Assembly (NCBI RefSeq): GCF_020745735.1
Contig: NC_083409.1
Coordinates: forward strand, 24,200,048 to 24,264,047
Length of the DNA: 64,000 nt
DNA from: Hemiscyllium ocellatum
Taxonomy: Eukaryota
Direction: 5' to 3'
The notes under the pieces were generated by a model. That model had not been told where the DNA came from, did not search any database, and was given only the letters and a program-made list of their open reading frames with translations. Position 1 is the stretch's first letter. Each line of letters starts with the position of its first letter. The position numbers and the translations under genes were made by a program. This document shows positions 8,616-49,588 of this stretch, in pieces.

Positions 8616-8739
8616 CTCCTTTATCTTATTTTTAGTTGAGAGTGAAAGCAAGAAGTTTGTTCTGAACAGGGTGATTAGGAAAAGCACAACTGAAAGACTC
8701 CCAGTTCATCCCAAAAAAGATTAGTTCCTTGAAAGTGGA

Positions 8740-13300: not shown

Positions 13301-13589
13301 TGGGAGCCAGGTGCGAATATCAGAGAGGAACACCAAGGACCACAGAATCCTCAGAGCAGTCAATAACTCACCACCCAGTGGGAAGGATGTGGAGAAATAC
13401 AAATGCAAGGAATTTAGAGACCTGCAAATATGATAGAGCCGTTATAAATGGGGGGGGGGGGGTCTTTAATTTCTGAATATAGTGACCAGAGTGGCAAGAG
13501 TGTGTTTTGGTGAATTTTCAGATGGCATTGGTGGCTTAGTGGTGGATCGGGTTGTGGGGGGTGGGGGGGCAGAGGTGGGGGTTCGGGTC

Positions 13590-13885
13590 AGCATAGTGGC
13601 TCAGTGGTTAGCACTGCAGCCTCATAGTACCAGGGTCCCAGGTTCAATTCCAGCCTTGGGTGACTGTGTGGAGTTTGCACATTCTCCCTGTGTCTGCATG
13701 TTTTTCCTCCGTGTGCTCTGGTTTCCTTCCACAGTCCAAAGATGTGCAGGTCAGGTGAATTGGCCATGCTAAATTGTCCATAGTGTTTGATGCATTACTG
13801 AGAGGGAAATGGGTCTGGGTGGGTTACTCTTCGGAGGATCGGTGTGGACTTGTTGGGCTGAAGGGCCTCTTTCCACACTGTGGAG
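13590..13885 (+). mobile_element. HE1-like V-SINE
   Basis: TGGCTCAGTGG A-box, GGTTCAATTCC B-box and V-domain. Confidence 0.85.
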
Positions 13886-13899
13886 AATCTAATCTAATC

Positions 13900-16290
13900 A
13901 TTGGCAGTGAAGAAGGCTGTCTAAGAATACAGTGGAATCTTGACCAACTGGGCCAGTGGACTGAGGAATGGCAGATGGAGTTTAATTCAGATAAATGTGA
14001 GTGCTGTATTTTGGTAAGACACAAGAGATGGGTGAGATCCTGAACAAATATTTTAGGTCAGTATATATTGTGGAGAAAGCTAGGGAATTTGGAAAAATAG
14101 TGATGTCTTGAAAAGAGACCACACAAATGAGGAGATGCTAAAGATCTTAAAACACATAAAGGTAGATAAACCCTAGGACCTGACCAGGTGTATCCCAGAA
14201 CATTGTGACAAACTAGGGAAGAGTTTTTGGGACCCTTGCTGAGATATATGTATCATCGGCAACCATGGGTAAGATGCTGGAGAAACAGAGAGGTTGGCTA
14301 AGATTACGCCATTAATTCAGAAAAGCTGTAAGGAAAAGCAAGGGAACGATAGACCAGTGAGCCTGATGTCAGTGCTGGGTAAGATGTTGGAGTGGATTCT
14401 GTGGGACAGGATTTACATCGTTTGGATAATCAGTGTGGCTTTGTGAATAGGCAATCATGTCTCCTGAATTTGATTCAGGAGGTGACAAAAAGATTGATGA
14501 AGACAGAACAGTAGACATTGTCAATATGGACTTCAGAGTAAAGTGTTTGACAAGGTTCCACACCATAGACTGGTTAGTAAGGTTAGACCACGTGGGATCC
14601 AGGGGGAGCGAGCCATTGGGGTCAAAAAATTGGCTTGAAGATAGGAGACAGAGAGTGGTGGTAAATGGTTGCTTTTCAGACTGGAGATCTGTGAATATCT
14701 GTGTGCCGCAAGGATTGGTGCTCAGTTCACAAATGCTTTTCATCATTTAAAGAAATGATTTGGATGTGAATATAGGAATTACTCTAAGTTTGTAAATGAC
14801 ACCAAAATTGGTGGGACAGTGGATAGTGAAGAAGATTATCTCAGGGTACAGCGGGACCTTGATCAGATGGGGCAATGGGTAGAAGAGTGGCAAATGGAGT
14901 TCAGTTTAGATAAATGTGAGATGTTGCATTTTGGAAAGGCAAACCAGGGCAGGAGTTATACAGTTAATGGGAGGGCCCTGTGGAGTGTTGCTGAATAACA
15001 GACGTAGGGGTGAAGATGCAGGTACATTATTCCTTGAAAGTGGGGTCACAGGTAGACAGGGTGATGAAGAAGGTGTTTGGTTTGCTTGCTTTTGTTCATC
15101 ACTGCATTGAGTCCAGGAGTTGGAACATCATGTTACAGCAGTACAGGAGATTGGTGAGGCCACTTTGGGAATGATGTGAACAATCCTATCATCCTGAGAT
15201 AGGAAGGATGTTGTTAAACTTAAAAAGCTGCAGAAAAGATTTACAAGGATGTGGCCAGGATTTGGAGGGTTTGAGCTGTCGGGAAAAGCTGAAGAAACTG
15301 GGGCTATATTCCCTGCAGCATCTAAGGCCTCGGGGTGACCTTATGGATGTTTATAAAACCATGAGGGGCATGGACAGGGTGTATATCCAAGGTCTTTTCC
15401 GTTGGAAAGGGATTCCAAAACAAGAGGACATAAGTTTAAGGTGAGAGGCAAAAGATTCAAAAGGGACCTGAGGGGTAACTTGTCACACAGAGGGTGGTGC
15501 ATGTCTGGATTGAGTTGCCAGAGAAAGTGTTGGAGGCAGATACAGTTACAGCATTTAAAACACATTGGTATGGGTACAAGAATAGGTTGGGTTTCGAGAG
15601 ATGTAAGCCAAATGCTGGCAAATGGGATGTGGTCATTTTAGGATATTTGGTTAGCATGGACAAGTTGGACTGAAAGGTCTGTTTCCACGCTGTATGACTC
15701 CATGACTATGAGCGGCTGGAAAAGCTGAGACTTCTTACCCTGAAGCGGAAGGTTCTGAGGAGTGACCTTGTAGAGGTTTGGAAAATCATGAGGGATATAG
15801 ATAATGTGAAGAATTCTGGAAGGAGGCGAATGTTTTGTAGCGATGGCAAAAATTGTTCCCAAAGATTATTCCGGGGATGAGGAATATCAGTTATGAAGTT
15901 TGATTGGAGAATTTGGGACTGCCTTCTTTGGAGAAGGTTGAGAGGAGACTTGTTCAAGGAATTCAAAATCAGGAAGGGCCTGGACAGAGTAAATAGGGAG
16001 AAAATGTTCCCAATTTAGAAAGGATTCAGACCAAGAGACCACAGATTGAAAGCAATTGGGAAAAGTAACAAAAGTGAGATGGGGAACAACATTTCTAGCC
16101 AGTGAGTGGTTAAGGTGTGGAATGCACTGCCTGAGAGTGTGGTGGAGGCAGCTTCAATTGAAACATTCTGAAGGGAATGAGGCTGTTATTTGAAAAGAAA
16201 CAATGTGCAGGGTGACAGGGAGAAGGCAGGAGAATGACACTCAGTGAATTGCTCATTCGGAGAGCCGGTCCAGACAGGATGGGTGGAATT
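13900..16290 (+). mobile_element. CR1 RT and 3' fragments (two or more copies)
   Basis: VDIVNMDF, NWLEDRRQRVVVNGCFSDWRSV..VPQG and FTQRVV..WNALPE motifs. The paralog is at 50,560-53,250. Confidence 0.85.
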
Positions 16291-16339
16291 GCGTCCTTGT
16301 GCATTGTAACAATTCTGTGATTGTGAGATTGAGCAGAGT

Positions 16340-16580
16340 TAAAGCTGGGGGAGGTGGGAGCTCGGTGTCTCACTGTGCTGCTGCTGCTGCTGCTGCTGCT
16401 GAGGTCAGTGAGATCAGAGACTGGGACAGGGAGCCAGAGCTCACATCAAACTCTGCCCATGTCTGTCACACTGAGACTGGCAGAAGGCTAGTCATTGATT
16501 TCACTCCATGCTGCAGGAATGGGACCACAGGCTGCAAATGGACAGAGCTCCTCCACACAGTGAGTAAAACTGACTGACTT
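16340..16580 (-). promoter_or_regulatory. Conserved J-proximal intronic block (candidate intronic enhancer) with (CAG)n and lone heptamers
   Basis: About 8 substitutions in about 240 nt versus 50,300-50,535, against about 80% identity in the adjoining J-proximal segment. It contains overlapping CATTTG/ATTTGCAG next to TGTGGT. Confidence 0.5.
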
Positions 16581-16774
16581 CTGTCTTGCTGCTTAAGCGG
16601 GTCAATGGAACTAAAGAAGTACAGCTGGACACCCTGTTCGACACAGTGCTCCTCAATCAACCATTTCATTCACTGCAGCTCCCCACTAACACCTTCAACA
16701 ATTCAGCATTTGTGTTTTAGAAAGTGTATTTCAGTATTGACAGGGTTAATAACGGACAATTGAGGTTTACTTGC

Positions 16775-16809
16775 TCAGTCTGAGCTTGGTTCCTTTCCCG
16801 AACGTGTAC
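16775..16809 (-). CDS. IGKJ: J segment J1 (YTFGKGTKLRL); splice donor is GCAAGT
   Basis: FGxG motif, 35 nt, flanked by a canonical 23-RSS. The phase-1 donor position matches J2 but reads GC. Confidence 0.97.
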
Positions 16810-16848
16810 CACAGTGAGAGCTCCCAGTGCAGAGGCTGTACAAAAACC
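16810..16848 (+). other. 23-bp-spacer RSS of J1 (canonical)
   Basis: CACAGTG at 16810-16816, 23-nt spacer, ACAAAAACC at 16840-16848. Confidence 0.98.
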
Positions 16849-17292
16849 TCTGCTCTCTGCTTCCCCCTGTCACTCTCAACCTCTCCCTGTCTCTCTCTGT
16901 CTCTGTCTATTCTTGGTCAATCTCATTCACTCCCTACCCCTCTCTGTCTCTCCCTCATTCATGTGTCTTTATCTCTCTGTCTCCCTGGGTTGTGTCCAGC
17001 TACTCTCGGGGGTTTGTGAAATTTAGTTTTCATTGTTAAATCTTGCAGCTGTTCTTCACATGCGGCCATGGAGTGTAAGAGGGAAACTTGAGGCCTTCAG
17101 TGAGCGGTGGACACCACAGGGACTGGAGTGTGAAGTGGACAGTGACAATCCCAGCATGAGGTAATTTGTTCAATTTACTTTATATATAACTGTGGATGTG
17201 TCAGTGCAGGAGGTGGGACTGTCTGTCCATTATTATGCATTTCATATAACTGTTGGATGTGTCAGTACAGGAGGTGGTGTTGTGCGTGTTGA

Positions 17293-17320
17293 GGTTTTTA
17301 TATGGCTCTGTATCACTGTA
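17293..17320 (-). other. 12-bp-spacer RSS of V1 (defective)
   Basis: TACAGTG (17320-17314), 12 nt, ATAAAAACC (17301-17293). The first C of the RAG-critical CAC is mutated. Confidence 0.95.
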
Positions 17321-17616
17321 AAGGCTGCTGCTATACTGCTGACAGTAATAGTCAGCGACATCTTCATTCTGAACATTGCTGATTGTCAGGGTGAAACTGG
17401 TCCCTGATACACTGCCGGTGAATCGATCGGAGACTCCTGTGAATCGATTTGTTGCATAATAGATCAGGAGAGAGGGTTTGTGACCTTCTCGCTGCTGGTA
17501 CCAAGCAAGGTTGCTGCTAATGCTTTGACTGGCCGTACAGGTGAGTGTTGCAGTCTGGCCCAGTCCCACTGACAGCACCGGGGGAGACTGGGTCATGATG
17601 ATGTCCCCACTGATAC
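17321..17616 (-). CDS. IGKV: V exon V1 (11-nt leader part 2 plus 95-codon kappa-type V region)
   Basis: ccctcag|GT ATC AGT GGG then [38 protein letters not shown]...[15 protein letters not shown]; conserved Cys/Trp/Cys. Confidence 0.97.
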
Positions 17617-17800
17617 CTGAGGGGTCAGAGAGAAACACAGTGAAGTCAGAACTGTCATAGAAAGAGCCAGTCAAATGAGAGATTGTTTGAGACACTGAGC
17701 ATTCCTCTGGTTTCAGCATTTTCCCTTCAATCACAAGTCAGTGGAATTGGAGTGAAATGGAGAGCAGCGAAAGATTCAAGGTGGAAGGAGAGATTTGTAC

Positions 17801-17849
17801 CTGCAACACAGAATGCCAGGGGCCAGATTAACTGGATGTGTGAAATCAT
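17801..17849 (-). CDS. IGKV: Leader exon L1 (MISHIQLIWPLAFCVA-G)
   Basis: cacaccATG context, 49 nt, phase-1 donor G|GTACAA, 184-nt intron to the V exon. Confidence 0.93.
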
Positions 17850-17904
17850 GGTGTGTGCTCCTGTCCCTGTGCCTGGTTCCTGATAAACTCTCCCTTCACT
17901 GGGC

Positions 17905-18005
17905 TCTGCTTTATAAAGCTGCAGCCTGTGAGAGTCTGGGTGTTCCTCAGTATGTAAATGGCATCAGGCAGAGAGAGCCACGTCAGCCCCTGACACTTCC
18001 ACTTC
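17905..18005 (-). promoter_or_regulatory. V1 promoter: TATA, octamer variant, CRE/G-box and ETS site
   Basis: GCTTTATAAAGC at 17908-17919, ATTTACAT at 17959-17952, TGACGTGG at 17985-17978, GGAAGTG at 18000-17994. Confidence 0.75.
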
Positions 18006-18039
18006 TCTCTCGCTCTCTCTCTCTCAGAGAATCATTGAT

Positions 18040-18720
18040 GTGAACAACATTGAATGAGGCCATTTGGCCCATTATGTCTGTGCTGGGAAACAAAGATCTG
18101 ATGACACTAATCCCATCCTCCAGCTCTTGGCCCATTACCCTGGGGGCTACAGCAACACAAGGGAAGATCTAAACACTGCTCCAATGTCACGAGAGTTTGT
18201 GACTCAGTCAGACTTTCAGGCAGTGAGTTCAAGACTCCCACCTCCCTCTGGGTGAAAACATTTCTCCTCAATTCTCCTCTCACTCCAATTTGACTGGGCC
18301 TGGACTCACTCAAGTTCAGAAGGATGAGAGGGAATCTGATTGAAATGTATAAAATTCTAACAGGGCTGGGCAGGGAGGAGGTTTCCCCTGGTTGGGAAGT
18401 CATGGGACCCAGTCTCAGGGGGATACAGGGTAGACAATTTAGGACTGAGATGAGGAAACATTTCTTCACTCAAAGGGGAGGACAACTGTGGAACTCAAGG
18501 AACTGAATAAATTCAAGAAAAAGAGAGAGATAATTGTTTTGCATTTTAACAGCATGAAGGGAATGGGGAGAAAGCAGGAATATGGTTTTGAGGTGGAGGA
18601 TCAGCCATGATCATACTGAATGACAGAGCAGAATGAAAGGGCCAAAAGGCCTACTCCAGTTCCGAGTTTCTATGTGTCCATGTCTGTGTTACCTGGGACA
18701 CAGGTTATTGAGTCCTTTAC
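18040..18720. mobile_element. CR1 3'-end fragments in both orientations upstream of V1
   Basis: ELRRNVFTQREVGVLNSLPE (minus) and MRGNLIEMYKILTGL (plus). The paralog is at 48,060-48,870. Confidence 0.8.
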
Positions 18721-18929
18721 TGATGTGTAAAGTGCCTTCTTACCCACGCTACCACTTCCCCAAATAATCTTATCCCCCTCTATCATGTCCCCTCTCAGCC
18801 TTCACTGCTTCAAGGAAACAATCCCAACCTTTCCAAGATTTCCCCACAGCTGACCCTTCATCCCAGGCAGCATCTTGGTAAATCTCTGCACCCTCTCAAG
18901 TACAATCACATCCTTCCCAGAATGTGGTG

Positions 18930-19296
18930 ACCAGGACCTATCCACCTCTCTCTCTCTGTCTCACATCTGTCACTTCTTTCTCTCTATCCCTCTTTCTCCT
19001 ACTGTTAATAGCTTTCATGTTCTCTCTCTCTCTCACTCTGTCTCATAGCCACTCTCCCCAATTCACTCATGCTTTCTCACTCCATCTCATCATTATTTTT
19101 CCATCTCTCACTGTCTCCATAACTCCTTCCCTCTCTCGCTTCAATTTAAATCCTCTATTATCTCTCCTCTCTATACCTCCCTCTGTCTCTCTCCCTCCCT
19201 CTCTCCATTCCCAATCTACAGTCGTACTCCCTCCCTCTCTGTCATTCTGTTTCTAATCATACTCATGTCTCTCACTTTCTTTCACTCTCTCTCTGT

Positions 19297-19349
<53 letters not shown>

Positions 19350-19390
19350 ACAGACACTCACCCTTTGTCTCTGACTCACTTCTCTCTCTT
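18930..19390. repeat. CT-rich low-complexity tract with (CA)n at about 19,299-19,347
   Basis: Seen directly; the paralogous GA-rich tract is at 47,165-47,870. Confidence 0.9.
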
Positions 19391-19895
19391 TCTCAGTGTC
19401 CCAGGTTGTGGCAGTTGAATTCAGGATGAATCTCCCTCTCTCTGCCCCACTCATGGATGTTAACCCTTGACCCCAGAAGCATGTTTTCTCCTGGAGTAAG
19501 GCCCCATTTTCCACATTGACCTGGATTTGGCCTCTCTCAGAAAGATGGCTAGATTCTTGTCAAATGAAGGGCAGTTCTGTGCTGTTGGCCTATTCTCACT
19601 GGGGACTGGTTTGGACACAAAGCTCATTCCATGAAGACCCAGCAGAGAGAGGAGATCCTCAGGCCATCAGTATGACCTGGAGGGACAGGACAGGCTCTGA
19701 CTCACTGATCTAGCCTGTCCATTCACAACATGTTCCAATCCCTTTCCCTCTCCTACCCCTCTCCTTCCCTTTCCATGATCAGTCTCTGAGTCAGGGTGTT
19801 TTACTGGGATGTGGGTTGAACCATTACATAGTTAAAACAGAAAGGAACTGAACCCCACACTCACCTTGGAGTCTATGATGCACTGGACTCTCCTA

Positions 19896-21535
19896 CAGAG
19901 TCCAGTAAACATGGCCTCCTTCCTGCAGGAGCCTCCACTAGAGATCAGTAAACATTGGTCTCCTTCTGACTGGACACTCCAAAGGAGAAGAGTAAACATG
20001 TACCTCTTTCAGACTGGATCGTCTAGTAGAGACCAGTAAACATGGACCTCCTTCCTGCTGGAACCTCCAACACAGACCAGTAAACATGGATCTCCTTCTG
20101 ACTGGATCCTCCAAGACAGATCAGTAAATATGGGCCTCCTAATCACTGGAACCTCCAATGGAGATGAGTAGATGGTTGAGTTTTTGAAGAAGTAAGCAAG
20201 AAGATAGGTAAAGATAGAGGAGTTCACTCTGTCTACATGGAGTTAATACAAGGTTCCCCATGGTAGACTGCTCAGTAAGATTATATCACAGAGGATCCAG
20301 GGAGAGCTAACCAATTGGATATAAAATTGGCCTGTTGGTAGGAGGCTGAGGCTGGTGAGAGAGGGTTGTTCTTCAGACTGGAGGCCAGTGACCAACTGTC
20401 TGTCACAAGAATCGATCCTGGATGCACTGTTGTTCATCATTTATATGAACAATTTGGATGAGAAAATAGAAGGAATGGTCAGTAAGTTTGTGGCTGACGT
20501 TAAAATTGTTGGCATCATGGACAGGGAAGAAGGTTATCCAAGAGTGCAATGACATCTTGATCAACTGGGCCAGTGGGTCAACAAATCCAGATGGAAATTT
20601 TGATAAATGGAAGGAGTTGCATTTTGGTAAGACAAACCAGGGCAGGAATTACACAATTAATGGTAGAGCCATGGGGAGTGTTGTTGAACAGAGAGACTGA
20701 GGGGTGCAGGTACATAGTTCCTTGGAAGTGGGGTCACAGGTAGACAGGGTGGTGAAGAAGGTATTTGGCACGCTCACCTTCACTGGTCAAAGCAGGGAGT
20801 ACAGGAGCTGTACGAGGCATTGGGAAGGCCACGTTTGGGCACAGTACATTTCTGCTCATCCTGGTATAGGAAGGAACTTATGACAGTGGTTTGAATAAAA
20901 GAAAGATTAACAGGGATGTTATCAAGATTGGAGGATTTGAATTACAAGATGAGGATGAATAGGCCAAGATGTTTTTCCAGGAAATGCAGAAGATTGAGGG
21001 GTGACCTTATAGAGGTTGTAGAATCATGAGGGTCATAGATAAGGTGAATAGTCAAAGTCTTTTCCCCAGGGTAGGAGAGTCCAATACTAGAAGGAGGAGG
21101 CTTAAGTTGAGAGGGAAAAGATTTAGTAGGAAACTGAGAGGCAACATTTTCACACAGAGGTTAGTGTGTATGTGCAATGAGCTGACAGAAGAATTCATAG
21201 AGGTGAGTACAATTACTACATTTCGAGGACATTTTTACAGGAACATGGATAGGAAGGATTTAGAGAGAATTGGGCCAAACACATGCAAATGGGACTAGTT
21301 CAGTTTTGGATACGTGGTTGGCATGGATGAGTTGAGATGTACGGCCTGATCCCATGCTGTAAACCTCTATGACTCTTTGATGATGTATACATGGGACACT
21401 TTCCCATAGAACCAGTAAACATGGACCTCTTTCCACTGGAACCTCCAATAGACACAAATAAACAGGGCCTCCTTCCCACTGGATGCTCCAGAAGAGAACA
21501 GTAAACATGGCCCTCCTTCCCTCAGGACTGTCCAG
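19896..21535. repeat. About 44-bp minisatellite (about 11 units) split by a CR1 RT fragment (about 20,171-21,388)
   Basis: The cagtaaacatgg core occurs at 19903, 19946, 19990, 20034, 20078, 20122 and 20166, then at 21413, 21457 and 21499. Confidence 0.9.
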
Positions 21536-22779
21536 CACCTGAGCTGCAAACCCCACATCCTCTCCATCATGTATGCCTCTTATTTCAAACTCAACAACAT
21601 TGTCTCTGCACTACCTCTGCCCCTTGACCACAGAAACCCTAATTCCTGCTCGTCCTGCCCCCTAACTCTATGATTCCAATGTCCTCCCCCAGCTTCCTAA
21701 AGCCATATTCCATAAACTCCAACTTGTCTGATATGGAGTGGCCCCTCCCTGTCTTATCCATCTGTCATTCCAGAATGACCCCTGACCTCACTGCCAGCCA
21801 AATGCCTCCATGGCCTCCCTCCTCCCTCCGTCTGTGTCCTGCTGCAGACTCACATTCCCTCCCTCCCCCTTCCATCTTCTGTCTCTGGTCTCCTGCCCAT
21901 TGCTGCTTGCTCCAACCCACCATTGACAGCAGAGCCTTCAGACCCCTACAGCATGCTCTCTGACCTCCTGCCCTTGATCCCTTCCCCTCTCAATGGTTGT
22001 GCTATTGAATATACTGTTCAATCCCATCACTTTTGGTTCACTGTTCCCTTGCCATTGATCTGCTGAATTATTCCTCATCAGTAAATCGAGTCTGGCCTGT
22101 TCCCTGAGTTGGTTCAAGAGAGTTTTCCTTGAGAAAACACTCTTCTGTTGTCTGTTTCTCCCATACTTTGTGTAAAGGTGAGTCGAAGTGCATGTAAGCT
22201 CTTATACAGCACAGACAGAGGTCACTGGGCTGATTGTGACTGTTAGTCAAATGAGTCCAATGAGTCCCATTTCCTCAGCCTTTCCTGTATAACCCTGCAA
22301 TTATTTCCTTTTCAGCTATTTCTCAAAATGCCCTTTTGAAAGTTGCTGTTGAATCCACTTCCACTCACCTTGCAGACAGTCATCATGAACTCGCTGGATA
22401 AAAAACATTCCTAACTTCTCTCTTGTCCTTCAGACTCTTTCTGAAATGTGTGCCCTCTGGTTACTGACCCTCCTGCCTGGAGAAACAATTTGTCCTGTAT
22501 TTACTGCACCCAGACTCTCTAATTGTGAACCCCTCATTGAGTGAGATCTATTTCCAGCACAGGGGGAGAACATTCAGCCTGTCAGGTAAATGTTGTCATT
22601 TCATGGAGCAATCTAGTCAGTCCCACCCTCTCCCCTACTCGACCCCCAGGGCCTTGCAGGTTTATTTCCATCAAGAGCCCATCCAATCTGCCATTGCAAT
22701 CACTGAGTGTCTTCACCCGCCTCACCTGAATGGGCACTAATTTCCAAGACTTTGCCAATTGCTGCTAAAATCAAAGTTC

Positions 22780-23360
22780 TTTCCTGACATTCCATATCTC
22801 TTGCCCAAAAGAATGTAAGATAATCTCAAAAGATTATCTCCACACGGACTGTGCGGTGGTCACCCTTACTGATACTGTCATGGACAGATACACCACCAGC
22901 AGGCAGATTGGTGAGGGTGATAGTGAGTATGTTTTTCCCTTTTGTTGGTTCCCTCACCACCTGCCCCAGGTCTAGTCTAGCAGCTGAATCAGGTGGAGTG
23001 TGACCAGTTTGCTCAGTAGTGATGCTTCTGAGCAGCTCTTGATGGTGGGCTTTGAAGTCCCTGACTCAGAGTATATCCTGCATCATTCCCATCCTCTGTG
23101 CTCCCTCCAAGTGTTGTTCTACATGGAGGAGGACTGACTGCTCAGTTGAGGTTGGAGTGGAGGGCGGTGCTATGTGGTAATCAGCAGGAGGTTTCCTTCC
23201 CCATGTTTGACCTGCTGTCATGAGGCTTCATGGATTCCATAGTTAATGGTGAGGACTCTCAGGGCAACTCCCTTCCGACTGTACACACCACTGTGTTGCC
23301 TCCCCTGCTTGGTCTATCCTGCCAGTTATAAACTGAATGAGGGAAAAATTGTGTGCAGGT
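22780..23360 (-). mobile_element. Non-LTR retroelement endonuclease fragment (a second LINE family; related copy at 45,000-46,340)
   Basis: Shares gactttgaagtccc...gtgttgttc...ggcaactccc segments with 45,700-46,000. APE-like peptide IGKSDHHTV is present in the longer copy. Confidence 0.65.
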
Positions 23361-23494
23361 TTCACAGCTTGGAGACAGAGCTGCTGCTGGATTCTACTTC
23401 TGATCTCCGAGTGCAGGTGTATGTGTTTGTGAGAGAGTGACTGACACCTTTTCCAAAAATGCGCTGTTTCTGCAAAAAATAAATCCCAGAACCA

Positions 23495-23790
23495 GCCTCC
23501 TGTGCTGTCAGATTCCAGGGAGTGCAGATGGTTCACAGTTTTCTCCCGTCTCAGTAACAAACACCCAGCTGCTCCGAGCTCCTTCTTTCACTTCCTCTTT
23601 TGGTGAAGTTTCAACCTTGTGCTCTGACAGTCTTTGCAGTTATTTTTTACACTGGGGCTTTCTGCTGTGGTCAGAATCTCTAATAATAAGTGTCCAATCA
23701 GTGATAATCACACCAGCTAAGAGCAGTCAGGACTGAGGAGCCAGGCTCACTGTGAAACATATTGGGAAGATCAAAGCCATCCTCTTCAGA
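23495..23790. promoter_or_regulatory. Candidate upstream B-cell enhancer, copy 1
   Basis: CAGATG at 23525, CAGCTG at 23566, ETS-IRF composite TTTCACTTCCTC at 23586-23597, RUNX TGTGGT at 23666, CCAAT at 23694. About 94% identical to 43,620-43,920. Confidence 0.55.
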
Positions 23791-24384
23791 TCCTGGTATA
23801 AACTCCATCCCTCTCCCTGAGCACTGTCTGCTGTTCAACCAGACTTTTTACAAACTGGGTCTCATGTTTGAGAATGATCTAAGCCCCATATCTTCCATAT
23901 CACAAAGATCAGCCACTGAAAATCTCAGCCATGTTTATGGGGCTCCAAACATGACCATTCCAATGGCTGATGCACATCACAGCCACTGCCCTCCGTATCC
24001 TTCAGTTCATCCAAAATTCTGCAGCCCGTATCCAAGCTTGCACCAAGTCCCGTTCCCACAACCCCCTGCACCCTGTGCCTAGATTGGCTCCTGGTCGAGC
24101 AACACCTCGATTTTCAAATTCTCATCCTTGTTCTCAAATCCCTCTCTGCCCTCTACCCTCCCTATCTCTGTAACCTCCTCCAAGCTGCCTCACTCCATGT
24201 GGTCAGCAATCTTGGATAATTGGTTCTCTATTCCTTCATCCAAGTCATTGAGAAATATTGTGAAATACTGAGGCCCCTGCACAAATCCCTGGGGACACCA
24301 CTATTCACATCTTGTTCATTGGAGAGCACACACATTATCCCTCTTCTCTGTCTCCTACCTCCAAACTAATTCCTAACCAAAGAC

Positions 24385-27300
24385 AAATACTTTTCTATCA
24401 CTGTCTTGATGATAGGAAGCAGCGGGTAATATTGGAAGGATGCTTGTCAGACTGGAGGTGTGTGTTGAGTGGAGTGCCTCAGGGCTCAGTGCTGGCCCCA
24501 TTACTGTTTGTTATCAAGATTAATGATTTGGATGAGAATCTGTAAGGCATGATTAGTAAGTTTGATGCGCAGGTCAGGTGAATTGGCTATGTTAAATTGG
24601 CCATAGTCTTAGGTACATTAGTCAGAGGGAAATGGGTCTAGGTGAATTACTCTTCAGAGGGTCGGTGTGGATTGGTTGGGCCGAAGACCTGTTTCGACAC
24701 TGTAGGGAATCTAATCTCTAATTTGTACAGGATGTCAGTGAGGTCGCACTTGGAATATTGTATTCAGTTTGGTCACCTTGTTATAGGAAGGATATTACTA
24801 AACCAGAAAGAGTACAGAAGAAATTTGCAAGGATGTTGCCTGGACTCAACAATCTGAGTTATAGGGAGAGGTTAGGCAAGTTAGGACTTTTTTCTTAGCG
24901 CGTAGGAGACTGGTGGGGGAACTTTTAGAAGTGTATAAGATCATGAGAGACATGGATAGGGTTGGGGAAACGAGGATGAGAGGGCATCAGTTTAGTGTTG
25001 GAGAGGAATGAATAAAAGGGAACCTGAGGGGCAACATTTTTACACAGAGGGTGGCACGCATGTGGAATGAGATGCCAGCTGAAGTGATTGAGGTGGATAT
25101 ATTAACAACATTTAAAAGACATTTGGACAAATACATAGATAGGAAAACATTTGAAGGACATGGGCCAAGTGCAGGGAAATGGGGTTAGCATGGATGGACA
25201 TTTTGGTCAGCACGGTCCAGTTTGAGCCAAAGGGCCTGTCTCTGTGCTGTAGGACTCGATAGCTCTAAGACTCTATAATTCCATATGTTTCCATGTTTAT
25301 GAACAGTCTCTCAAACATAGAAACAAAGGAACTAGGAGCAAGAGGAAGCCATTCAGCCCTTCGAGTTGGCTCTGCCATTCAATATGACCATGGCTGATCA
25401 TCCAACTTAGTCCCCTGCTCCCATTTTTTCTCCGTAAAATTTAACCCCTTTAGTCCTAAGAAAATACTTATCCTCTCTTGAAAATATTGAATGTTTTGGG
25501 CTCAACCGCTTTCTGTGACAGAATATTCCACAAGCTTCCCAGTCTCTGGCTGAAGAAATGTCTCCTCAGCTCAGTCTGAAATAACCTTTCCCTTTTCTTT
25601 AAACCATAACTCGTAGTTCTGGATTCCCCAGTCATCAGGAACATCCTCCCTGTGTTGTTCTAGTCTTGTCCTGTTCGGATTTTCAAGGTTACAATATGAT
25701 TCCTTTCAATCTTCTAAGCGCCAATGAATATAATCCCAACTGATCCAGTTTCTCATCAGATCTAAGTGCTGTCCTCCCAGGAATCAGTCTGGTAAACCTT
25801 CGCTGCCCTCCCTCCACAGCCAGAACATCCTTCCTCAGATAAGGAGCCCGAAACTACCCACGACAGAATCATAAAATCTCACAGTACAGAGGAGGCCCTT
25901 CAGCCCATTAACTGTGTACCAGCCAAACTACACTAAACCTATACCAGTCCCACTTTCCAACATGAGGCCCATAGCTTGAATGTTATGACATTTCAACTGC
26001 TCACCCAAGTACATTTTAAAGTTTGTGAGGTTTCCCACCTCAACTCCCCTCCCAGGCTGTGCACTCCAGATGCACACCAGCCTCTGGATGAAAAACATTT
26101 TCTTCAAAACATCTTGAAACCTCCTATCTTTCACATTGAATGTGAGCCAACTTGTTATTGACCCTCCCACGAATGAGAACAGCTGCTTTCTCTCCTCCCT
26201 GTCCATTCCCCTCATAACCTTATACACCTCTATCAGGTCCCCCCTCCACCTTCTCTGCTCTGAAGAAAACAACCCGAGATGATCCAATTTCTCTTCATCA
26301 CTGAAAGGTTCCATTCCACACAACATCCTAGTGATTCCCCTCTGCACCCCGTCCAGTGCAATCACCTCCTGCCTACAGTGTGGTGACCTGAACTGCTGTG
26401 GTCTAACCAATGTTCTACTTAACTGCAACATATCCTCCTGCTTTTATAACCAATACCTGACATGACAAAGGCAAGTGTCCCATATGCCTTTATAACTGCT
26501 CTGTTAACCTGTCTTGCCATATTCAGCGATCAGTGGACAAGCACCCAAGATCACGCTGTTCCTTAGAGCTTCCTCAGTTCAAAGAACAAAGAACAATGAA
26601 AATTACAGCACAAGAATTGGCCCTTTTGCCCTAATAGCCTGCGCTGGTCCATATCCTCCATCTAAACCTGTCATCAATTTTCCAAGTTTCTGTCTCCCTT
26701 TGCTCCCTGCCCATCCATGTATCTATCTAGATATATCTTAAAGAATGCAATTGTGCCTGCCTCTACCACCTCCACTGGCAACGTGTTCCAGGACCAATCA
26801 CCCTCTGTGTGAAGAACTTTCCATACATATCTCCCTTAAATGTTTCCACTCTCACTTTGAACTCATGACCCAGAGTAATTGAGTCCCTCACACTGGGAAA
26901 AAGTTTCTTGCTATCCACCCTGTCTACACCTCTCATGATTTTGTAGACGTCAATCAGGTCCCCCCTCAATGTTCGACTTTCTAATGAAAATAATCCTAAT
27001 CTACTCAACCTCTCTTCATAGCTAGTGCCCTCCATACCAGGCAATCCTGGTAACCTCCTCTGCACCCTCTCCAAAGCATCTACATCCTTCTGGCTGTGTG
27101 GCGACCAGAACTGTGGGCAGTATTCCAAATCTGGCCAAGCCAAAGTCCGATATAATTCTCACAAGACCTGCCAACTCTTGTACTGAATACCATGTTTGAT
27201 GAAGGAAAGTATGCCATATGCCTTCTTGACCACTCTGTCGATCTGTGTTGCCACCTCCAGGGTGCAATGGACCTGAACACCCAGGTCTCTCTGGCCATCA

Positions 27301-30300
27301 ATTTTCCCAGGGTTTTCCATTCACTGTACAGTTTATTCCAGATTTGGATCTTCCAAAATTCATCAGATCGCATTTGCCCAGATTGAACTCCATCCATCCA
27401 TTGCTCTGCCCAACTCTCCAATCTATCTATATTCTGCTGTATTCTCTGACAGTCCCCTTCACGATCTGCTCTCCACCAATCTTAGTGTCATCTGCAAACT
27501 TGTTAATCAGATCACCTATACCTTCCTCCAGATCATTTATGTATATCAAAAACAAGAGCGGTACCAGCACGGATTCCTGTTCTCCATTCTGAAAAACTCC
27601 TTCCACTACTACTGTCTGTCTCCTGTTGCCCAGCCTGTTCTCTATCCATCTAGTGAGTACACTCTGGACCCCATGCGACTTTAATTTCTCCATCAGGCTA
27701 CCATGGGGAACTTTATCAAACACCTTACTGAAGTCCATGTGTATGACATCCGCAGCCCTTCCCTCATCAATCAACTTCATCACTTCTTCAAAAACGTCTA
27801 TAAAGTTGGTAAGACATGACATTCCCTGAACAAAATCATGCTGTCTATAACTGAAATTTCTTCCAAATGTAAATAGATCTTACCCCACAGTATCTTCTCC
27901 AGCAGCTTCCCTACCACTACATCAGGCTCACTGGTTGATAGTTACCTGGATTATCCTGGTTACCCTTAAAAATTAGCAATTCTCCAGTCCTCTGGGACCT
28001 CATCCATGTTCAAGGTTGCTACTAAGATGTCGATTAAGGACCCAATTATTTCCTCTCTTGCTTCCCTCAGTAACCTGGGATCGATACCATCCCGACCTGG
28101 GGACTTGTGCACCTTGATGCCTTTTAAAATACCCAACACTTCCTCCCTCCTTAAACCGACTTGACTCTGAGTAATCAAACATCTATCCCCAACTTCAACA
28201 ACTGTCATTTCCCTCTCCTTGGTGAATACCGACGTAAAACACTCATTAAGAATCTCACCCATTTTCTCTGACTCCACACATAACATTCCTCCTTTGTCCT
28301 TGAGTGGAACAACCCTTTCTCTAGTCACCCACTTGCTCCTTATATATGAATAAAAGGATTTGGAATTTTCCTTAATCCTGTTTGCTAATGATATTTCATG
28401 ACCCTTTTTAGCCCTTCTAATTCCTCATTTCAGATCGGTCCAACTTTCCCAATATTCTTCCAAAGCTTTGTCTATTTTCAACCACCTAGACCTTATGTAT
28501 GCATCCTTTTTCCTCTTAGCTAGTCTCACAATTTCATCTGTCATCCAACGTTCCCTTTTTCTGCAATTTCAATCCCTTATTTTCACAGGGACATATCCGT
28601 CCTGACTCTAGTCAACCTCTCTTTAAAAGCCTCCCACATATCAAATGTGGATTTCCCTTTAAACAGGTACTCCCAATCCACAGTCCCCAACTCCTACCAA
28701 ATTTTGCGATAGTTGGCCTTCCTCCACTTTAGCCCTCTTCCTTGAGGACCAATCTCATCTTTGTCCATGAGCATTCTAAAACTTATGGAATCATGATCAC
28801 TCTTCCCAAAGTAATCCCTTACTGAGATTTCAACCACCTGGCCGGGCTCATTCCCCAACACCAGTCCAGTCTGGCCCCTTCCTGAGTTAGACTATTTCCA
28901 CATTACTCTGTAAAATCCTCCTGGATGTTCCTTACAAATTCTGCTCCATCTTAACTGCAAATATGAAGTGAATCCCAGTCAATGTTGGGAAAGTTAAAAT
29001 TTTCCATCATCACCACCTTGTTACTCCTACAGCTTTCCATAATCTGTTTACATATTTGTACCTCTATCTCACGTTCACGGTTAGGAGGCTTGTAGGATAG
29101 CACCAACATTGTTACTGGACCCTTCCTGTTTCTGAGCTCTGCCCATATTGCCCCACTGCTTGAGTCCTCCATAGTGCCCTCCTTCAGCACACCTGTGATA
29201 TCCACTCTGGCCAGTAATGCAACTCCTCCATCCCTTTTATCTCCCTCTCGAACCCATCTGATACATCTGTATCCTTGGGATGTTTAGTTGCCAATCTTGC
29301 CATTCCCTCAACCACGTCTCAGTAATAGCATTAACATCATACTCCCAGATACTAGTTCAAGCCTTAAATTCCTCTGCCTTACCTACTACACTTCTCACAT
29401 TAAAACCAATGCACCTCAGACCATCTGTCCCTTTGTGTTCATCATCTGCTCCCTACCTACTCTTAACCTTAGTCACGCTGACTTCAATATCTAGTTCCTG
29501 ACAAGCTTTAGTTACTCCCTCCTTATTGTCCACTAACCACCTCATTTGGTTCCCATCCCTCTGCTACACTATTTTGAACTCTCCCCAAGAACGTGATCAA
29601 ACACATCCCACAGGACACTGATTCCAGTCCTGCCCAGGTGTAGACCGCTCGATTTGTAATTGTCCCTCCCCAGGAACCAGTCCCAATGTCCCAAAAATCT
29701 GAACCCTTCCCTTCTGCACCATCTCTCAAGCCACGCATTCATCCTGCCTATATTTTCATTTCGACTCTGACTAGCACATGGCACTGGTAACAATCCTGAG
29801 ATTACTACGTCTGAGATCCTACATTTAATATGGTTCCTAACTCCCTAAATTCTGCTTGTAGGACCTCATTCCATTTATTACCGATATCATCAGTCCCTTC
29901 ATGAACTGTCACAGCTAGCTGTTCACCTCCCCCTTCAGAATGTCCTGCAGCCGATCTGAGACATCCCTGACCCGTACAACTGGGAGGCAGCATGCCATTT
30001 GTGAGTCTTGTTTTTGACCACAGAATCGCCGATCTACTCCCCTTACAAAGTCCAAACAAACCATATCTATGGGCCCCCCCCTTATCAAATCTACTCACTA
30101 CATCCTCAAACAATTCCAGTCGATTTTTTAAGCATGATCTCCCTTTCGAAAATTCATGCTGACTCTGTCCAGTTCTGCCACTGTTTTCAAAGTGCTAAGC
30201 TATAAAATATTTTATGATGAACTTGAGCATTTTCTCCACTGCTGACTTCCGGCTAATTTGTCTAAAATTTCTTATTTTCCCTCTCTCTCTCTCTCTCTCT

Positions 30301-30600
30301 CTTTTTCAATAGACGTGTTAAATTAACTCCCTCCATTTTGTAGGACCTATTCCACAGTCGAAAAACAGATAACCATCAATGTTTCTCATATTTTACAACC
30401 ACTTCCTGAAGCACTCCTGAAAATAGATTATTTAGCCCTGCTGATTTAAGACATTCCAATTTTCCCAGAACCATTTTCTTCCAACAACTGACTTCCTTCA
30501 GCTCCTTCCTCTGATAAAACCCCAAGTTCACCAACATGTCTGAGATTTATTTGAGAATTCATCTGTGCAGAAAGGTCCAGAATATGTTTATCTGTCATCT
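24385..30600. mobile_element. Nested CR1 insertions specific to the left arm, including a ~3.4 kb minus-strand CR1 (about 26,700-30,110) with ORF1 esterase, APE and RT remnants
   Basis: VTVHEGTDDIG / FRFLGHWDWF (SGNH), NFNFPNIDWD (APE), and MSCLTNFIDVFEEV...DFSKVFDKVPH...NKFADDTKIGG (RT). The segment is absent between the paralogous anchors at about 43,010 and 42,840. Confidence 0.85.
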
Positions 30601-30844
30601 CTTTGTTCCAACTATAACATTATAACACTTGTGTGGAACTTCCTTGAATGTCATCTGGACGTCCATATAAACAACACATTACCTTATCTCACACATTAGT
30701 GACCTCGTTAAAACATGTAACCAGGTTAGTTAAAGATGTCTGACCCTTTTAAATCCATGCTGATTTCGTCTGATCTGTTCACATTTGTCAGACATTCTGT
30801 CTCTAAACAGATTCAATTACTTCCCCACAATAGACATTCAACGA

Positions 30845-31390
30845 AGATAAAAACAATGACTGCAGATGCTGGAAACCAGATTCTGGATTAGTGGTGCTGG
30901 AAGAGCACAGCAGTTCAGGCGGCATCCGAGGAGCAGGCAAATCGACGTTTCGGGCAAAATCCCTTCATCAGGAATAAAGGCAGTGAGCCTGAAGCGTGGA
31001 GAGATAAGCTAGAGGAGGGTGGGGGTGGGGAGAAAGTAGCATAGAGTACAACCAAATGTGGCTGTGGGAGCGAGTTTGTTTCACAACATGGTTGAAGAGC
31101 TTCTCTCTACAAGAATCTCAGGGAGTCCCTCTCCCACTGCAACTCTCAGGTCATTTCCTCTGCACTGAAGCTCTTCAACCATGTCGTGAAACAAACTCGC
31201 TACCAAAGCCACATTTACTTGTACTCTCTGCTACTTTCTCCCCACCCCCACCCTCCTCTAGCTTATCTCTCCACGCTTCAGGCTCACTGCCTTTATTCCT
31301 GATGAAGGGCTTTTGCCTGAAGCATCGATTTCACTGCTCCTCGGATGCTGCCTGAACTGTTGTGCTCTTCCAGCACCACTAATCCAGAAT
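30845..31390. mobile_element. PLE-derived fold-back element (about 224-bp arms, 63-nt loop) with hammerhead cores
   Basis: 30880-31103 and 31167-31390 are reverse complements. The core on the minus strand at 30944-30971 is intact. The element is flanked by ATTCAA, and the empty site is in the right arm. Confidence 0.88.
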
Positions 31391-31464
31391 TCAATGGAGA
31401 TGTTCATTGTGAGTGAGGTTAGTAAACAGCTAGTACTGACACAAGGGGCTGAACAGCCTCCTCC

Positions 31465-42530: not shown

Positions 42531-43619
42531 GCACAGGAGGAGGCTGTTCAGCCCCTCGTGTCAGTGCTAGCTGTTTACGAGCCTCAATTATAATGAACAT
42601 CTCCATTGAATGTCTGTTGTCAGGAAGTGATTGAGTCTGTTTTTAGAGACAGAATAATGGACAAATATGATCTGGTCTGAGAGAATCAGCATGAATTGAC
42701 AAAGGTTCAGACATCTTTAACTAACCGGGTTACACTTCGTTAGGAGCTCACTAGTGTGGGATATAAGGTAATGTCGATGGCTATTGTCCATAGGGAATTC
42801 CAAAAGACATTTAAGAATGTTCCACAGAAGAAACATTGATTCAGATCTTACACTCCACAACCATCTGATGAAGGAGCAGCGCTCCAAACGCTGATGCTTC
42901 CAAACAAAGCTGTTGCATTAGAACCTGGTGTTCTGAGATTTTTAACATTTACACGACAGTCCAACACTGGCATCTCCAAATCATGGAATTGGATGGAATT
43001 TGAGAAATGCATTTACCTTGGGTCAGGAATGGGTCTGCCTAGGAGACAGAGAGGAAGGATAATGTGCATGTGTTCCAATGAGCCAGATGTGAGTAGTGGT
43101 ATTCCCAGGGATCTGTGCTGGGACCTCAGCTTTTCACGATATTTCTCAATGACTTGGAAGAAGAAACAGAGAGCCATATATCCAAGATTATCGATCACAG
43201 AGTGAGGCACCTTGGAGGAGGTCACAAAGATAGGGCGGGTGGAAGAACAGGGAGCAGATTGAGTACAAGGATGAGAATTTCAAAATCGAGGTGTTGCTGG
43301 ACCAAGAGCTGATGTCAGTCAGTGAGGATTGTGGTGGTCATGGTGGGGTGGGGCGGTGTGGGCAGGAGTGTGGGGTGGACTTGGTGTGAGTTTGAACATA
43401 GACAGCAGAGTTTGGGATGAGGTGATGTTTATGGAAGTAAATAGCTGTGATGTGGGCCTGGATAACATTGGAATGGTCACAAAAACATGGTTGAGATTTT
43501 CAGTGGTTGATATGTGGAGGATTTGTGCCTCAAATCAGCCCCAAAGATGAGGACAAAATTGTTAAGAGTCTGGTTGATCTGCAGTCACTGCTCAGGGAGA
43601 GGGATGGAGTTTGTACTGG

Positions 43620-43920
43620 GAGCTGAAGAGGATGACTTTGATCTTCCCAATGTGTTTCCCAGTGAGCCTGGCTCCTCAGCCCTGACTGCTCTTAGCTGCT
43701 GAGATTGTCACTGATTGGGCACTTATTATTAGAGATTCTGACCACAGCAGAAAGCCCCAGTGTAACAAATAACTGTAAAGACTGTCAGATCGCAAGGTTG
43801 AAACTTCACCAACAGGGGAAGTGAAAGAAGGAGCTCGGAGCAGCTGGATGTTTGTTACTGAGACGGGAGAAAACTGTGAATCATCTGCACTCCCTGGAAT
43901 CTGACAGCACAGGAGGAGGC
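43620..43920. promoter_or_regulatory. Candidate upstream B-cell enhancer, copy 2
   Basis: ATTGG at 43714, ACCACA at 43741, GGAAGTGAAA at 43817-43826, CAGCTG at 43841, CATCTG at 43882. All motifs of copy 1 are retained. Confidence 0.55.
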
Positions 43921-49054: not shown

Positions 49055-49103
49055 ATGATTTCACACATCCAGCTGATCTGGCCCCTGGCATTGTGTGTCG
49101 CAG
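49055..49103 (+). CDS. IGKV: Leader exon L2 (MISHIQLIWPLALCVA-G)
   Basis: cacaccATG context, 49 nt, donor G|GTACAA, 186-nt intron. Confidence 0.93.
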
Positions 49104-49289
49104 GTACAAATCTCTCTCCTTCCACCTTGAATCTTTAGCTGCTCTCCATTTCACTCCAATTCCACTGACTTGTGATTGAAGGGAAAATGCTGAAACCAGA
49201 GGAATGCTCAGTGTCTCCAACAATCTCTCATTTGACCGTCTCTTTCTGTGAAAGTTCTGACTTCACTGTGTTTCTCTCTGATCCCTCAG

Positions 49290-49588
49290 GTATTAGTGGG
49301 GACATCAGCATGACCCAGTCTCCCCCGGTGCTGTCAGTGGGACTGGGCCAGACTGCAACACTCACCTGTACGGCCAGTCAATCTGTTAGCAAGTATGTTA
49401 ACTGGTACCAGCAGCGAGAAGGTCAGGAACCCTCTCTCCTGATCTATTATGCAACAACTCGATTCACAGGAGTCTCCGATCGATTCACCGGCAGTGGATC
49501 AGGAACCAGTTTCACCCTGACAATCACCAACGTTCACAATGAGGATGTCGCTGACTATTACTGTCAGCAGTATAGCAGCTACCCTCGA
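49290..49588 (+). CDS. IGKV: V exon V2 (leader part 2 plus 96-codon kappa-type V region), apparently functional
   Basis: ccctcag|GT ATT AGT GGG then [38 protein letters not shown]...[11 protein letters not shown]. Confidence 0.97.

What the first reader, a model, noticed from the sequence alone, without database searches (positions are those of the whole stretch)
23495..23790. Candidate B-cell enhancer upstream of each V: ETS-IRF composite plus two E-boxes, RUNX and CCAAT, all retained in both arms
Seen: in about 175 bp, CAGATG, CAGCTG, (A/G)GGAAGTGAAAG, TGTGGT and CCAAT. Every motif is unmutated in the inverted copy (43,620-43,920), 5.1-5.6 kb upstream of each ATG, in a sea of TE debris. Established: GGAAnnGAAA bound by PU.1/Spi-B with IRF4/8 is the key site of the mammalian kappa 3' and lambda enhancers, usually with E2A and RUNX sites. 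Inference: each shark minilocus may carry its own enhancer 5' of V, unlike mammalian loci. In the head-to-head pair the two copies face each other across the spacer.
Basis: partly seen in the sequence, partly recalled or inferred. Interest (0 to 1): 0.7.

Follow-up and report, generated by a model that had tools for sequence, protein, structure and literature searches.

The report
Conserved upstream block of shark kappa genes
A roughly 350-base non-coding block a few kilobases upstream of shark antibody kappa light-chain genes is kept better than the genes' own variable exons across clusters and at least two other shark species. It carries a PU.1/IRF-type site, an E-box and a RUNX site at fixed spacing, so it is a credible but untested candidate for each cluster's own B-cell switch.

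Summary

Retention between the two arms proves little. The arms are one inverted segmental duplication, the block is only at its 71st-95th percentile of identity, and the chance that no mismatch hits the motifs is about 0.07. The EICE consensus occurs 4 times in the window against 3.9 expected.

The real evidence comes from other loci I fetched.
- The block lies upstream of kappa V, in the same sense, in two Chiloscyllium punctatum contigs and one Stegostoma tigrinum locus. One of the contigs holds a second head-to-head pair.
- A 157-bp core (23532-23688 / 43724-43880) is 85-96% identical across those copies. V exons are 69-77% identical and other alignable non-coding DNA about 70-76%.
- GGAAGTGAAAG is exact in 5 of 6 copies, CAGCTG in 6 of 6 (13 nt from the EICE in all), and the RUNX site in 5 of 6.
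- CCAAT (4 of 6), CAGATG (window only) and a TATAAA (left copy only) are not conserved.

There is no sign of a coding exon, a structured RNA or a dispersed repeat. Enhancer activity is untested. This scan has already flagged the same block at other kappa clusters of this genome.

The parts
23496..23850 (-). Left copy of the conserved upstream block, read in the sense of the left V gene. The homology tail runs on to about 23939.
   Evidence: Matches L001 3263-3615 (93%), L005 7295-7634 (87%) and L002 4839-5296 (76%).
23532..23688 (-). Most conserved 157-bp core of the left copy. It contains the RUNX site, a TAACTG box, the EICE, the CAGCTG E-box and the TTACTGAGA / GAGAAAAnTGTGAA boxes.
   Evidence: Alignment A3. 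Pairwise identity is 0.955 to the right arm and to L001, 0.91 to L005, 0.86 to L002a and 0.77 to L002b.
43562..43916 (+). Right copy of the block, in the sense of the right V gene. The core is 43724-43880.
23585..23595 (-). ETS-IRF composite element GGAAGTGAAAG, left copy.
   Evidence: Exact in 5 of 6 copies; L002b has GGAAATGAAGG.
43817..43827 (+). ETS-IRF composite element GGAAGTGAAAG, right copy.
23566..23571 (.). E-box CAGCTG, left copy, 13 nt from the EICE. The right copy is at 43841-43846.
   Evidence: Kept in 6 of 6 copies, with no indel between the EICE and the E-box in any copy.
23666..23671 (+). RUNX-type TGTGGT, left copy. The right copy is at 43741-43746 as ACCACA.
   Evidence: Kept in 5 of 6 copies.
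23694..23698 (+). CCAAT (CCAATCAG), left copy. The right copy is at 43714-43718.
   Evidence: Kept in only 4 of 6 copies.
23525..23530 (+). E-box CAGATG, left copy. The right copy is at 43882-43887. It is not conserved outside this window.
   Evidence: present in 2 of 6 copies, and 0 of 6 columns are invariant.
17201..17849 (-). Leader ATG (17849) and V exon of the left kappa cluster. The C exon is at 7833-8160 on the minus strand.
49055..49586 (+). Leader ATG (49055) and V exon of the right kappa cluster. The C exon is at 61681-62007 on the plus strand.

Best explanation
The block is a conserved cis-regulatory module that belongs to each kappa-type (NS4 / type III) V-J-C cluster of orectolobiform sharks. 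It lies 2.4-6.5 kb 5' of the leader, and the distance varies with transposon insertions.

**Shown**
- It is part of the duplicated cluster unit and keeps its sense relative to V.
- Its 157-bp core evolves several times more slowly than the flanking DNA and more slowly than the V exon.
- The core keeps a PU.1/Spi-type ETS site fused to an IRF half-site (GGAAGTGAAAG), a CAGCTG E-box exactly 13 nt downstream, and a RUNX site about 80 nt upstream.

**Inferred**
- In B-lineage cells a Spi-family factor recruits IRF4/8 to the composite site.
- Together with E-protein and RUNX binding this opens chromatin and activates the V promoter of that cluster, and possibly recombination accessibility or hypermutation targeting.
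- Each cluster would then be switched on autonomously.
- In head-to-head pairs the two modules sit in the shared inter-V spacer, one serving each gene.
For: **Recurrence**
- Copies lie upstream of V in the same sense in C. punctatum L001, C. punctatum L002a and S. tigrinum L005, as well as in both window arms.
- A reversed copy (L002b) sits 3.2 kb from L002a, which implies a second head-to-head pair.

**Constraint**
- Mean 100-bp identity of the block is 0.93 against 0.73 for other aligned non-coding DNA (L001).
- Against L005 it is 0.87-0.885, compared with 0.76 for other non-coding DNA, 0.79-0.80 for the V exon and 0.85 for the C exon.
- Against L002 it is 0.755 compared with 0.69-0.71.
- The core is 0.86-0.955 identical in the same pairs where V-exon nucleotides are 0.69-0.77.
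- Binomial P is 1e-8 to 4e-6 against local neutral proxies.

**Motifs**
- EICE 5 of 6, CAGCTG 6 of 6, RUNX 5 of 6, with fixed EICE-to-E-box spacing.
- GGAAGTGAAA equals the core of the mouse lambda-B PU.1 site printed in PMC4872103.

**Other readings that failed**
- No predicted protein covers the block, and 1-2 nt indels separate the copies.
- There is no Rfam hit and no compensatory pairs.
- There is no other copy in the window or elsewhere in the loci.

**One consistent case**
- The one evaluable cluster without the block nearby (L004) has a broken V exon.
Against: - There is no functional, chromatin or expression data.
- The motif set is short. The EICE consensus is at chance frequency in the window.
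- Motif columns (22 of 34 invariant, counting CAGATG) are not significantly better kept than the core average of 52%. The constraint could therefore serve other factors or another function.
- The core was delimited after seeing the alignment, so the P values are optimistic. The pairs are also not independent.
- Only one shark order is sampled. The window's own species is not identified, and orthology and paralogy of the loci are unknown. Localised gene conversion among clusters could inflate identity.
- The left cluster keeps the block although its RSS heptamer is damaged.
- L004 lacks the block, but it comes from a draft assembly with a gap.
Confidence: 0.55

Rival explanations
1. The block is a conserved element with a different job in the cluster. 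Candidates are the promoter or first exon of a non-coding (sterile or divergent) transcript, a boundary or insulator between head-to-head clusters, or a dedicated recombination-accessibility or hypermutation-targeting element like chicken DIVAC, rather than a classical transcriptional enhancer.
For: - The constraint is real, but much of it falls on boxes with no assigned factor: TAGAGATnCTGACCA, TTACTGAGA and GAGAAAAnTGTGAA.
- The left copy shows CCAATCAG about 100 bp before TATAAA, pointing away from V.
- The blocks lie between the two V genes in both head-to-head pairs.
Against: - TATAAA is present only in the left copy and CCAAT only in 4 of 6 copies, so a conserved core promoter is unlikely.
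- By eye I saw no convincing CTCF-type consensus. That is inspection only, with no matrix scan.
- DIVAC-type elements overlap enhancers in composition, so that sub-reading is an extension of the best explanation rather than an alternative to it.
Confidence: 0.25
2. The block is a neutral passenger. It is simply part of the inverted segmental duplication and of the ancestral cluster unit, and its similarity among copies reflects recent duplication or gene conversion rather than selection.
For: - Within the window the block is not exceptional. It sits at the 71st-95th percentile of arm identity, and motif retention has P of about 0.07.
- Shark Ig clusters form multigene families in which concerted evolution is plausible. 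This rests on established knowledge and was not tested here.
Against: - The same 157 bp stands out in every comparison, including S. tigrinum and the deeply diverged L002 cluster.
- Immediately adjacent DNA, and even the V exon, are far more diverged.
- Conversion tracts would have to hit the same short segment repeatedly.
Confidence: 0.1
3. The block is an old transposon fragment, for example an LTR U3-like piece with ETS, RUNX, E-box, CCAAT and TATA sites. It was present in the ancestral cluster and has no present function, or it belongs to a dispersed repeat family.
For: - The motif set resembles retroviral U3 enhancers (recalled from memory, not tested).
- The block is embedded in TE debris. 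Its V-proximal edge abuts the tail of a common repeat (family D13). Its distal flank from about 24180 is a LINE reverse-transcriptase fragment.
Against: - The window has no further copies. The fetched loci have none outside the position upstream of V.
- No LTR-type termini or target-site duplications were seen, by inspection.
- TATA and CCAAT are not conserved.
- Conservation far exceeds that of the neighbouring TE fragments.
- An ancient TE origin followed by co-option is not excluded, and it would be compatible with the best explanation.
Confidence: 0.1

Closest known systems
Mouse Ig lambda enhancers E-lambda 2-4 / 3-1 (lambda-B PU.1/IRF4 composite site plus E-box)
   Same: - The composite-site core GGAAGTGAAA is identical. 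The lambda-B oligo is printed in PMC4872103.
- An E-box lies close by.
- Both are associated with a light-chain gene. That lambda-B lies in the lambda 2-4 enhancer and binds PU.1 with IRF4 is established knowledge.
   Different: - The shark block lies 2.4-6.5 kb 5' of V, not 3' of C.
- There is one copy per V-J-C cluster.
- No homology beyond the motifs could be tested, because no mammalian reference sequence is available in the tools.
- Activity is unmeasured.
Mouse Ig kappa 3' enhancer (PU.1/IRF4 EICE, E2A and other sites)
   Same: The factor logic is the same (ETS-IRF composite plus E-box), and both belong to a kappa-type light chain. This rests on established knowledge.
   Different: - The position differs (downstream of C-kappa in the mouse).
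- The sequence of the composite site differs.
- The mouse element is one of three enhancers serving a whole translocon locus, whereas the shark block would serve a single minilocus.
Chicken IgL enhancer / DIVAC hypermutation-targeting elements
   Same: Both are compact clusters of E-box, ETS/IRF and related sites next to a small light-chain locus, and shark light chains also hypermutate. This rests on established knowledge.
   Different: The chicken elements lie 3' of C. Nothing here tests any role of the shark block in hypermutation targeting.
Earlier notes of this scan on the same genome (s1-216793, s1-228455, s1-228462, s1-198111 and others)
   Same: They describe the same kind of 260-350-bp block with an EICE, an E-box and a RUNX site about 5 kb upstream of other kappa clusters. 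The follow-ups likewise found it better kept than its surroundings.
   Different: - Those notes concern other windows. I could not read their DNA.
- It also adds a second head-to-head pair in C. punctatum and a block-less cluster with a broken V.

Membership tests
EICE-type immunoglobulin light-chain enhancer | ETS-IRF composite element GGAAnnGAAA | tested here: met
   GGAAGTGAAAG is present in both arms and is exact in 5 of 6 copies across three genomes.
EICE-type immunoglobulin light-chain enhancer | Neighbouring E-protein (E-box) site | tested here: met
   CAGCTG lies 13 nt from the EICE in 6 of 6 copies, with no indel between the two.
EICE-type immunoglobulin light-chain enhancer | Location 3' of C or in the J-C intron, as in mammals and birds | tested here: not met
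   The block lies 2.4-6.5 kb 5' of the leader ATG in every copy.
EICE-type immunoglobulin light-chain enhancer | B-cell-specific enhancer activity, and PU.1/Spi-B plus IRF4/8 occupancy | not testable with these tools
   This needs reporter assays and ATAC, ChIP or CUT&Tag in shark lymphoid tissue.
EICE-type immunoglobulin light-chain enhancer | Sequence homology to tetrapod enhancers beyond the motifs | not tested
   No tetrapod enhancer sequence is available in the tools. Only the 10-mer shared with the printed lambda-B oligo could be compared.
Conserved non-coding element under purifying selection | Substitution rate clearly below that of adjacent non-coding DNA in several independent comparisons | tested here: met
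   Caveats: the core was chosen after the fact, orthology is unknown, and only one shark order is sampled.
Dispersed repeat / transposon (including solo LTR) | Copies outside the Ig context; element termini and target-site duplications | tested here: not met
   There are no extra copies in the 64-kb window or in about 122 kb of fetched loci. No LTR termini were seen by inspection. Genome-wide copy number cannot be tested here.
Structured RNA gene | Rfam match or compensatory base-pair changes | tested here: not met
   There is no relevant Rfam match at E up to 1. None of 34 predicted pairs shows compensatory change, and the covariation term is unfavourable.
Protein-coding exon | Conserved reading frame, or inclusion in a gene model | tested here: not met
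   Copies differ by 1-2 nt indels. None of the 122 retrieved proteins aligns to the block.

The most novel reading that the evidence does not exclude
Every kappa minilocus of sharks carries its own PU.1/IRF-E2A-RUNX enhancer 5' of V. That would make the block the first antigen-receptor enhancer identified in a cartilaginous fish. It would show that the EICE-based logic of light-chain activation predates the split of cartilaginous and bony vertebrates. It would also give a physical basis for the cluster-autonomous, stochastic activation proposed for shark Ig genes. In head-to-head pairs, which are seen here and in a diverged C. punctatum pair, two such modules share one spacer and might act as a joint hub.
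Probability: 0.4. Interest if true: 0.75.

Novelty: new variant of a known kind. Interest (0 to 1): 0.55.

Why it matters
How sharks choose which of their many small antibody-gene clusters to switch on is an old open question. As far as I know, and in the paper library searched here, no enhancer has been described for any cartilaginous-fish Ig locus.

A short, sharply bounded, deeply conserved block with a mammalian-type PU.1/IRF site gives a concrete target. It is small enough for reporter assays, motif mutation and chromatin profiling. It also allows a test of whether each cluster is regulated on its own.

If the block were active, the ETS-IRF/E-protein logic of light-chain control would be older than the split between cartilaginous and bony vertebrates. 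The position of the element, 5' of V, would still differ from that in tetrapods.

Tried and rejected
- **More distant species.** Two Callorhinchus proteins are not on record. Only orectolobiform sharks could therefore be compared.
- **Metagenome scan.** An exact-pattern scan of metagenome contigs for the EICE-E-box core found nothing. That was expected and is not informative.
- **Contigs too short.** L003 and L006 have only 2.1-2.7 kb upstream of V and cannot be scored.
- **L004.** It lacks the block, but a TE abuts the break and a gap lies upstream, so the result is inconclusive.
- **Promoter or LTR reading.** Dropped, because TATAAA occurs in one copy only and CCAAT in 4 of 6.
- **Structured RNA.** No Rfam hit and no covariation.
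- **Coding exon.** No protein match, and there are frame-breaking indels.
- **MEF2 and CTCF sites.** By eye, the AT-rich stretch GTAAAAAATAAC is one base off the MEF2 consensus and varies between arms. I saw no convincing CTCF match. No matrix library was available for a formal scan.
- **Homology upstream of the block.** The stretch at about 25.3-26.0 kb that aligns to L001, L002 and L005 turned out to be a common LINE tail. It cannot be used as evidence that the unit extends further.
- **Literature.** Searches found no described shark Ig enhancer.

Full report
**1. What is in the window**

The window holds two kappa-type (NS4 / type III) light-chain clusters placed head to head.
- The left cluster is on the minus strand: leader ATG at 17849, V exon at about 17330-17640, C exon at 7833-8160.
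- The right cluster is on the plus strand: ATG at 49055, C exon at 61681-62007.
- The closest V and C relatives are 'immunoglobulin kappa light chain-like' proteins of Hemiscyllium ocellatum and Chiloscyllium punctatum, and nurse-shark NS4, at 90-96% identity. No retrieved protein is identical over its full length, so the species was not identified. It is an orectolobiform shark or a close relative.
- The clusters sit in the two arms of a large inverted segmental duplication, about 5000-24357 and 43040-63997. The arms are interrupted by arm-specific transposon insertions.
- The 18.7-kb spacer holds only LINE reverse-transcriptase fragments.

**2. The observation**

Coordinates are given in the observation check. 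The block's V-proximal edge lies 5.65 kb (left) and 5.14 kb (right) from the leader ATGs.

**3. Is it more than chance?**

Not on the window alone.
- The two copies are the innermost homologous island of the duplication, 88% identical over 444 bp and about 93% over 23496-23850.
- In 100-bp windows along all collinear arm alignments the median identity is 0.84. The block's windows fall at the 71st-95th percentile.
- With 26 mismatches in 355 columns, the probability that none hits the 34 motif bases is 0.066, and the motifs were chosen after reading the sequence.
- GGAANNGAAA occurs four times in 64 kb against 3.9 expected.

**4. Other clusters and species**

From kappa proteins found and I fetched six loci.

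| Locus | Source | Block | Identity to the window copy | Position |
|---|---|---|---|---|
| L001 | C. punctatum BEZZ01005289 | 3263-3615 | 93% | 6.4 kb 5' of the gene, same sense |
| L002a | C. punctatum BEZZ01000502 (V only 73% identical in protein) | 4839-5296 | 76% | 4.7 kb 5', same sense |
| L002b | same contig | 1644-920, opposite sense | 72% | 3.2 kb from L002a |
| L005 | Stegostoma tigrinum CM060516 | 7295-7634 | 87% | 2.4 kb 5' of the gene |
| L003, L006 | C. punctatum | cannot be scored | - | under 3 kb upstream available |
| L004 | C. punctatum | none within 8.3 kb | - | collinear at about 86% with the left arm |

- The V-side flank of L002b matches the left-arm type of flank. L002 therefore holds a second head-to-head pair.
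- In L004 a transposon abuts the exact break point and an assembly gap lies upstream. Its V exon is broken by two +1 insertions and a 22-nt deletion.
- The block is thus present at 5 of 6 clusters that could be evaluated. The single exception is a pseudogene in a draft assembly.

**5. Constraint**

Mean identity in 100-bp windows along collinear alignments:

| Compared with | Block | Other aligned non-coding | V exon | C exon |
|---|---|---|---|---|
| L001 | 0.93 | 0.73 | - | - |
| L005 | 0.87-0.885 | 0.76 | 0.79-0.80 | 0.85 |
| L002 | 0.755 | 0.69-0.71 | - | - |

- The six-copy alignment (A3) shows a 157-bp core, window 23532-23688 and 43724-43880.
- Core identity of the left copy is 0.955 to the right arm and to L001, 0.91 to L005, 0.86 to L002a and 0.77 to L002b. 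V-exon nucleotides in the same pairs are 0.69-0.77 identical.
- Against local neutral proxies (the shared old LINE fragment, the distal flank, or the mean of other aligned non-coding windows) the deficit of substitutions has binomial P between 1e-8 and 4e-6. For L002b it is 0.015.
- These P values are optimistic. The core was delimited after the fact and the pairs share history. The effect is nevertheless large and repeated.
- Only the V promoter and leader, the J segment with the start of the J-C intron, and a second island at 19485-19764 reach similar levels.

**6. Which motifs are conserved**

| Motif | Copies keeping it |
|---|---|
| EICE GGAAGTGAAAG | 5 of 6 exact; L002b has GGAAATGAAGG |
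| CAGCTG | 6 of 6, always 13 nt after the EICE |
| RUNX ACCACA | 5 of 6 |
| CCAAT | 4 of 6 |
| CAGATG | 2 of 6 (this window only) |
| TATAAA, 100 bp from the CCAAT | left copy only |

- Motif columns are not significantly better kept than the core average: 22 of 34 invariant against 52% overall.
- The safest statement is that the whole core is constrained, and that it contains an EICE, an E-box and a RUNX site.
- The 10-mer GGAAGTGAAA is identical to the core of the mouse lambda-B PU.1 site as printed in PMC4872103.
- That EICEs bind PU.1/Spi-B with IRF4/8 in the kappa 3' and lambda enhancers is established knowledge. That cartilaginous fish have Spi-family and IRF4/8 genes is also from the literature, recalled rather than checked here.

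**7. Alternatives examined**

- **Coding exon.** None of 122 retrieved proteins aligns to the block, and the copies differ by 1-2 nt indels.
- **Structured RNA.** No Rfam hit and no compensatory pairs.
- **Dispersed repeat.** There is no further copy in the window or elsewhere in the loci. The genome-wide count could not be made.
- **Transposon neighbours.** The block is flanked by transposon pieces: a common repeat tail on the V side, and a LINE RT fragment from about 24180 on the far side. An ancient transposon origin followed by co-option is not excluded.
- **Promoter or LTR.** This is weakened because TATA and CCAAT are not conserved.
- **Gene conversion.** It cannot be excluded formally. 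It would have to strike the same 157 bp in every comparison.

**8. Reading**

- The most likely reading (0.55) is a cluster-autonomous lymphoid enhancer, or a closely related cis-regulatory module, acting on the adjacent V promoter through Spi/IRF, E-protein and RUNX factors.
- A conserved element with another role (non-coding transcript promoter, boundary, or a dedicated accessibility or hypermutation element) gets 0.25.
- A neutral passenger and a functionless transposon relic get 0.1 each.
- Nothing here measures activity.

**9. Relation to what is known**

- In factor logic the block resembles the mouse lambda and kappa 3' enhancers and the chicken IgL enhancer.
- It differs in position (5' of V) and in being present once per minilocus.
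- Searches of the paper library found no described Ig enhancer in cartilaginous fish.
- This scan has flagged the same block at many other kappa clusters of this genome, and earlier follow-ups reached a similar verdict. I used those notes only as leads and re-tested the claims on independently fetched loci.

Noticed in passing
window 19485-19764 (-) and 46796-47049 (+): A second conserved non-coding island lies 1.6-1.9 kb upstream of each leader ATG. It is 91% identical between the arms, 89.5% to L001 and 83% to L003, and is still alignable in the diverged L002 cluster and in L006. It was not found in the Stegostoma locus L005. No factor sites were assigned.
   Followed up: partly
L002 920-1644 (reverse) and 4839-5296 (forward): A diverged C. 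punctatum kappa locus carries two block copies in opposite sense only 3.2 kb apart. The head-to-head pairing of kappa clusters is therefore not peculiar to this window. The partner V lies outside the fetched stretch.
   Followed up: partly
L004 7429-8327 and 14244-14977: This C. punctatum cluster is collinear (about 86%) with the window's left arm. It has a transposon where the block should be, and its V exon is broken by two +1 insertions and a 22-nt deletion over CDR1/FR2.
   Followed up: partly
window about 17300-17330 (-), 3' end of the left V: The recombination-signal heptamer of the left V reads TACAGTG where the C. punctatum counterpart has CACAGTG.
   Followed up: no
window 17900-18000 (-) and 48900-49000 (+): The V promoters share a TTTATAAAG TATA box and a TGACGTGG CRE-like site. 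The octamer position reads ATTTACAT on the left and ACTTACAT on the right, not the canonical ATTTGCAT.
   Followed up: no
proteins P0113 and P0116: Two proteins labelled Aeromonas veronii and Salmonella enterica are 80-84% identical to the nurse-shark kappa constant domain. They come from contigs of 507 bp and 990 bp, and look like animal DNA contaminating bacterial assemblies.
   Followed up: no
window 24400-43000: The spacer between the two blocks has no gene-like ORFs, only LINE reverse-transcriptase fragments and other repeats.
   Followed up: partly
window 19915-20214 and 47199-47829: A 44-nt tandem array of about 7 units lies upstream of the left V. A purine-rich GA/GT microsatellite tract lies upstream of the right V. 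Both are arm-specific.
   Followed up: no
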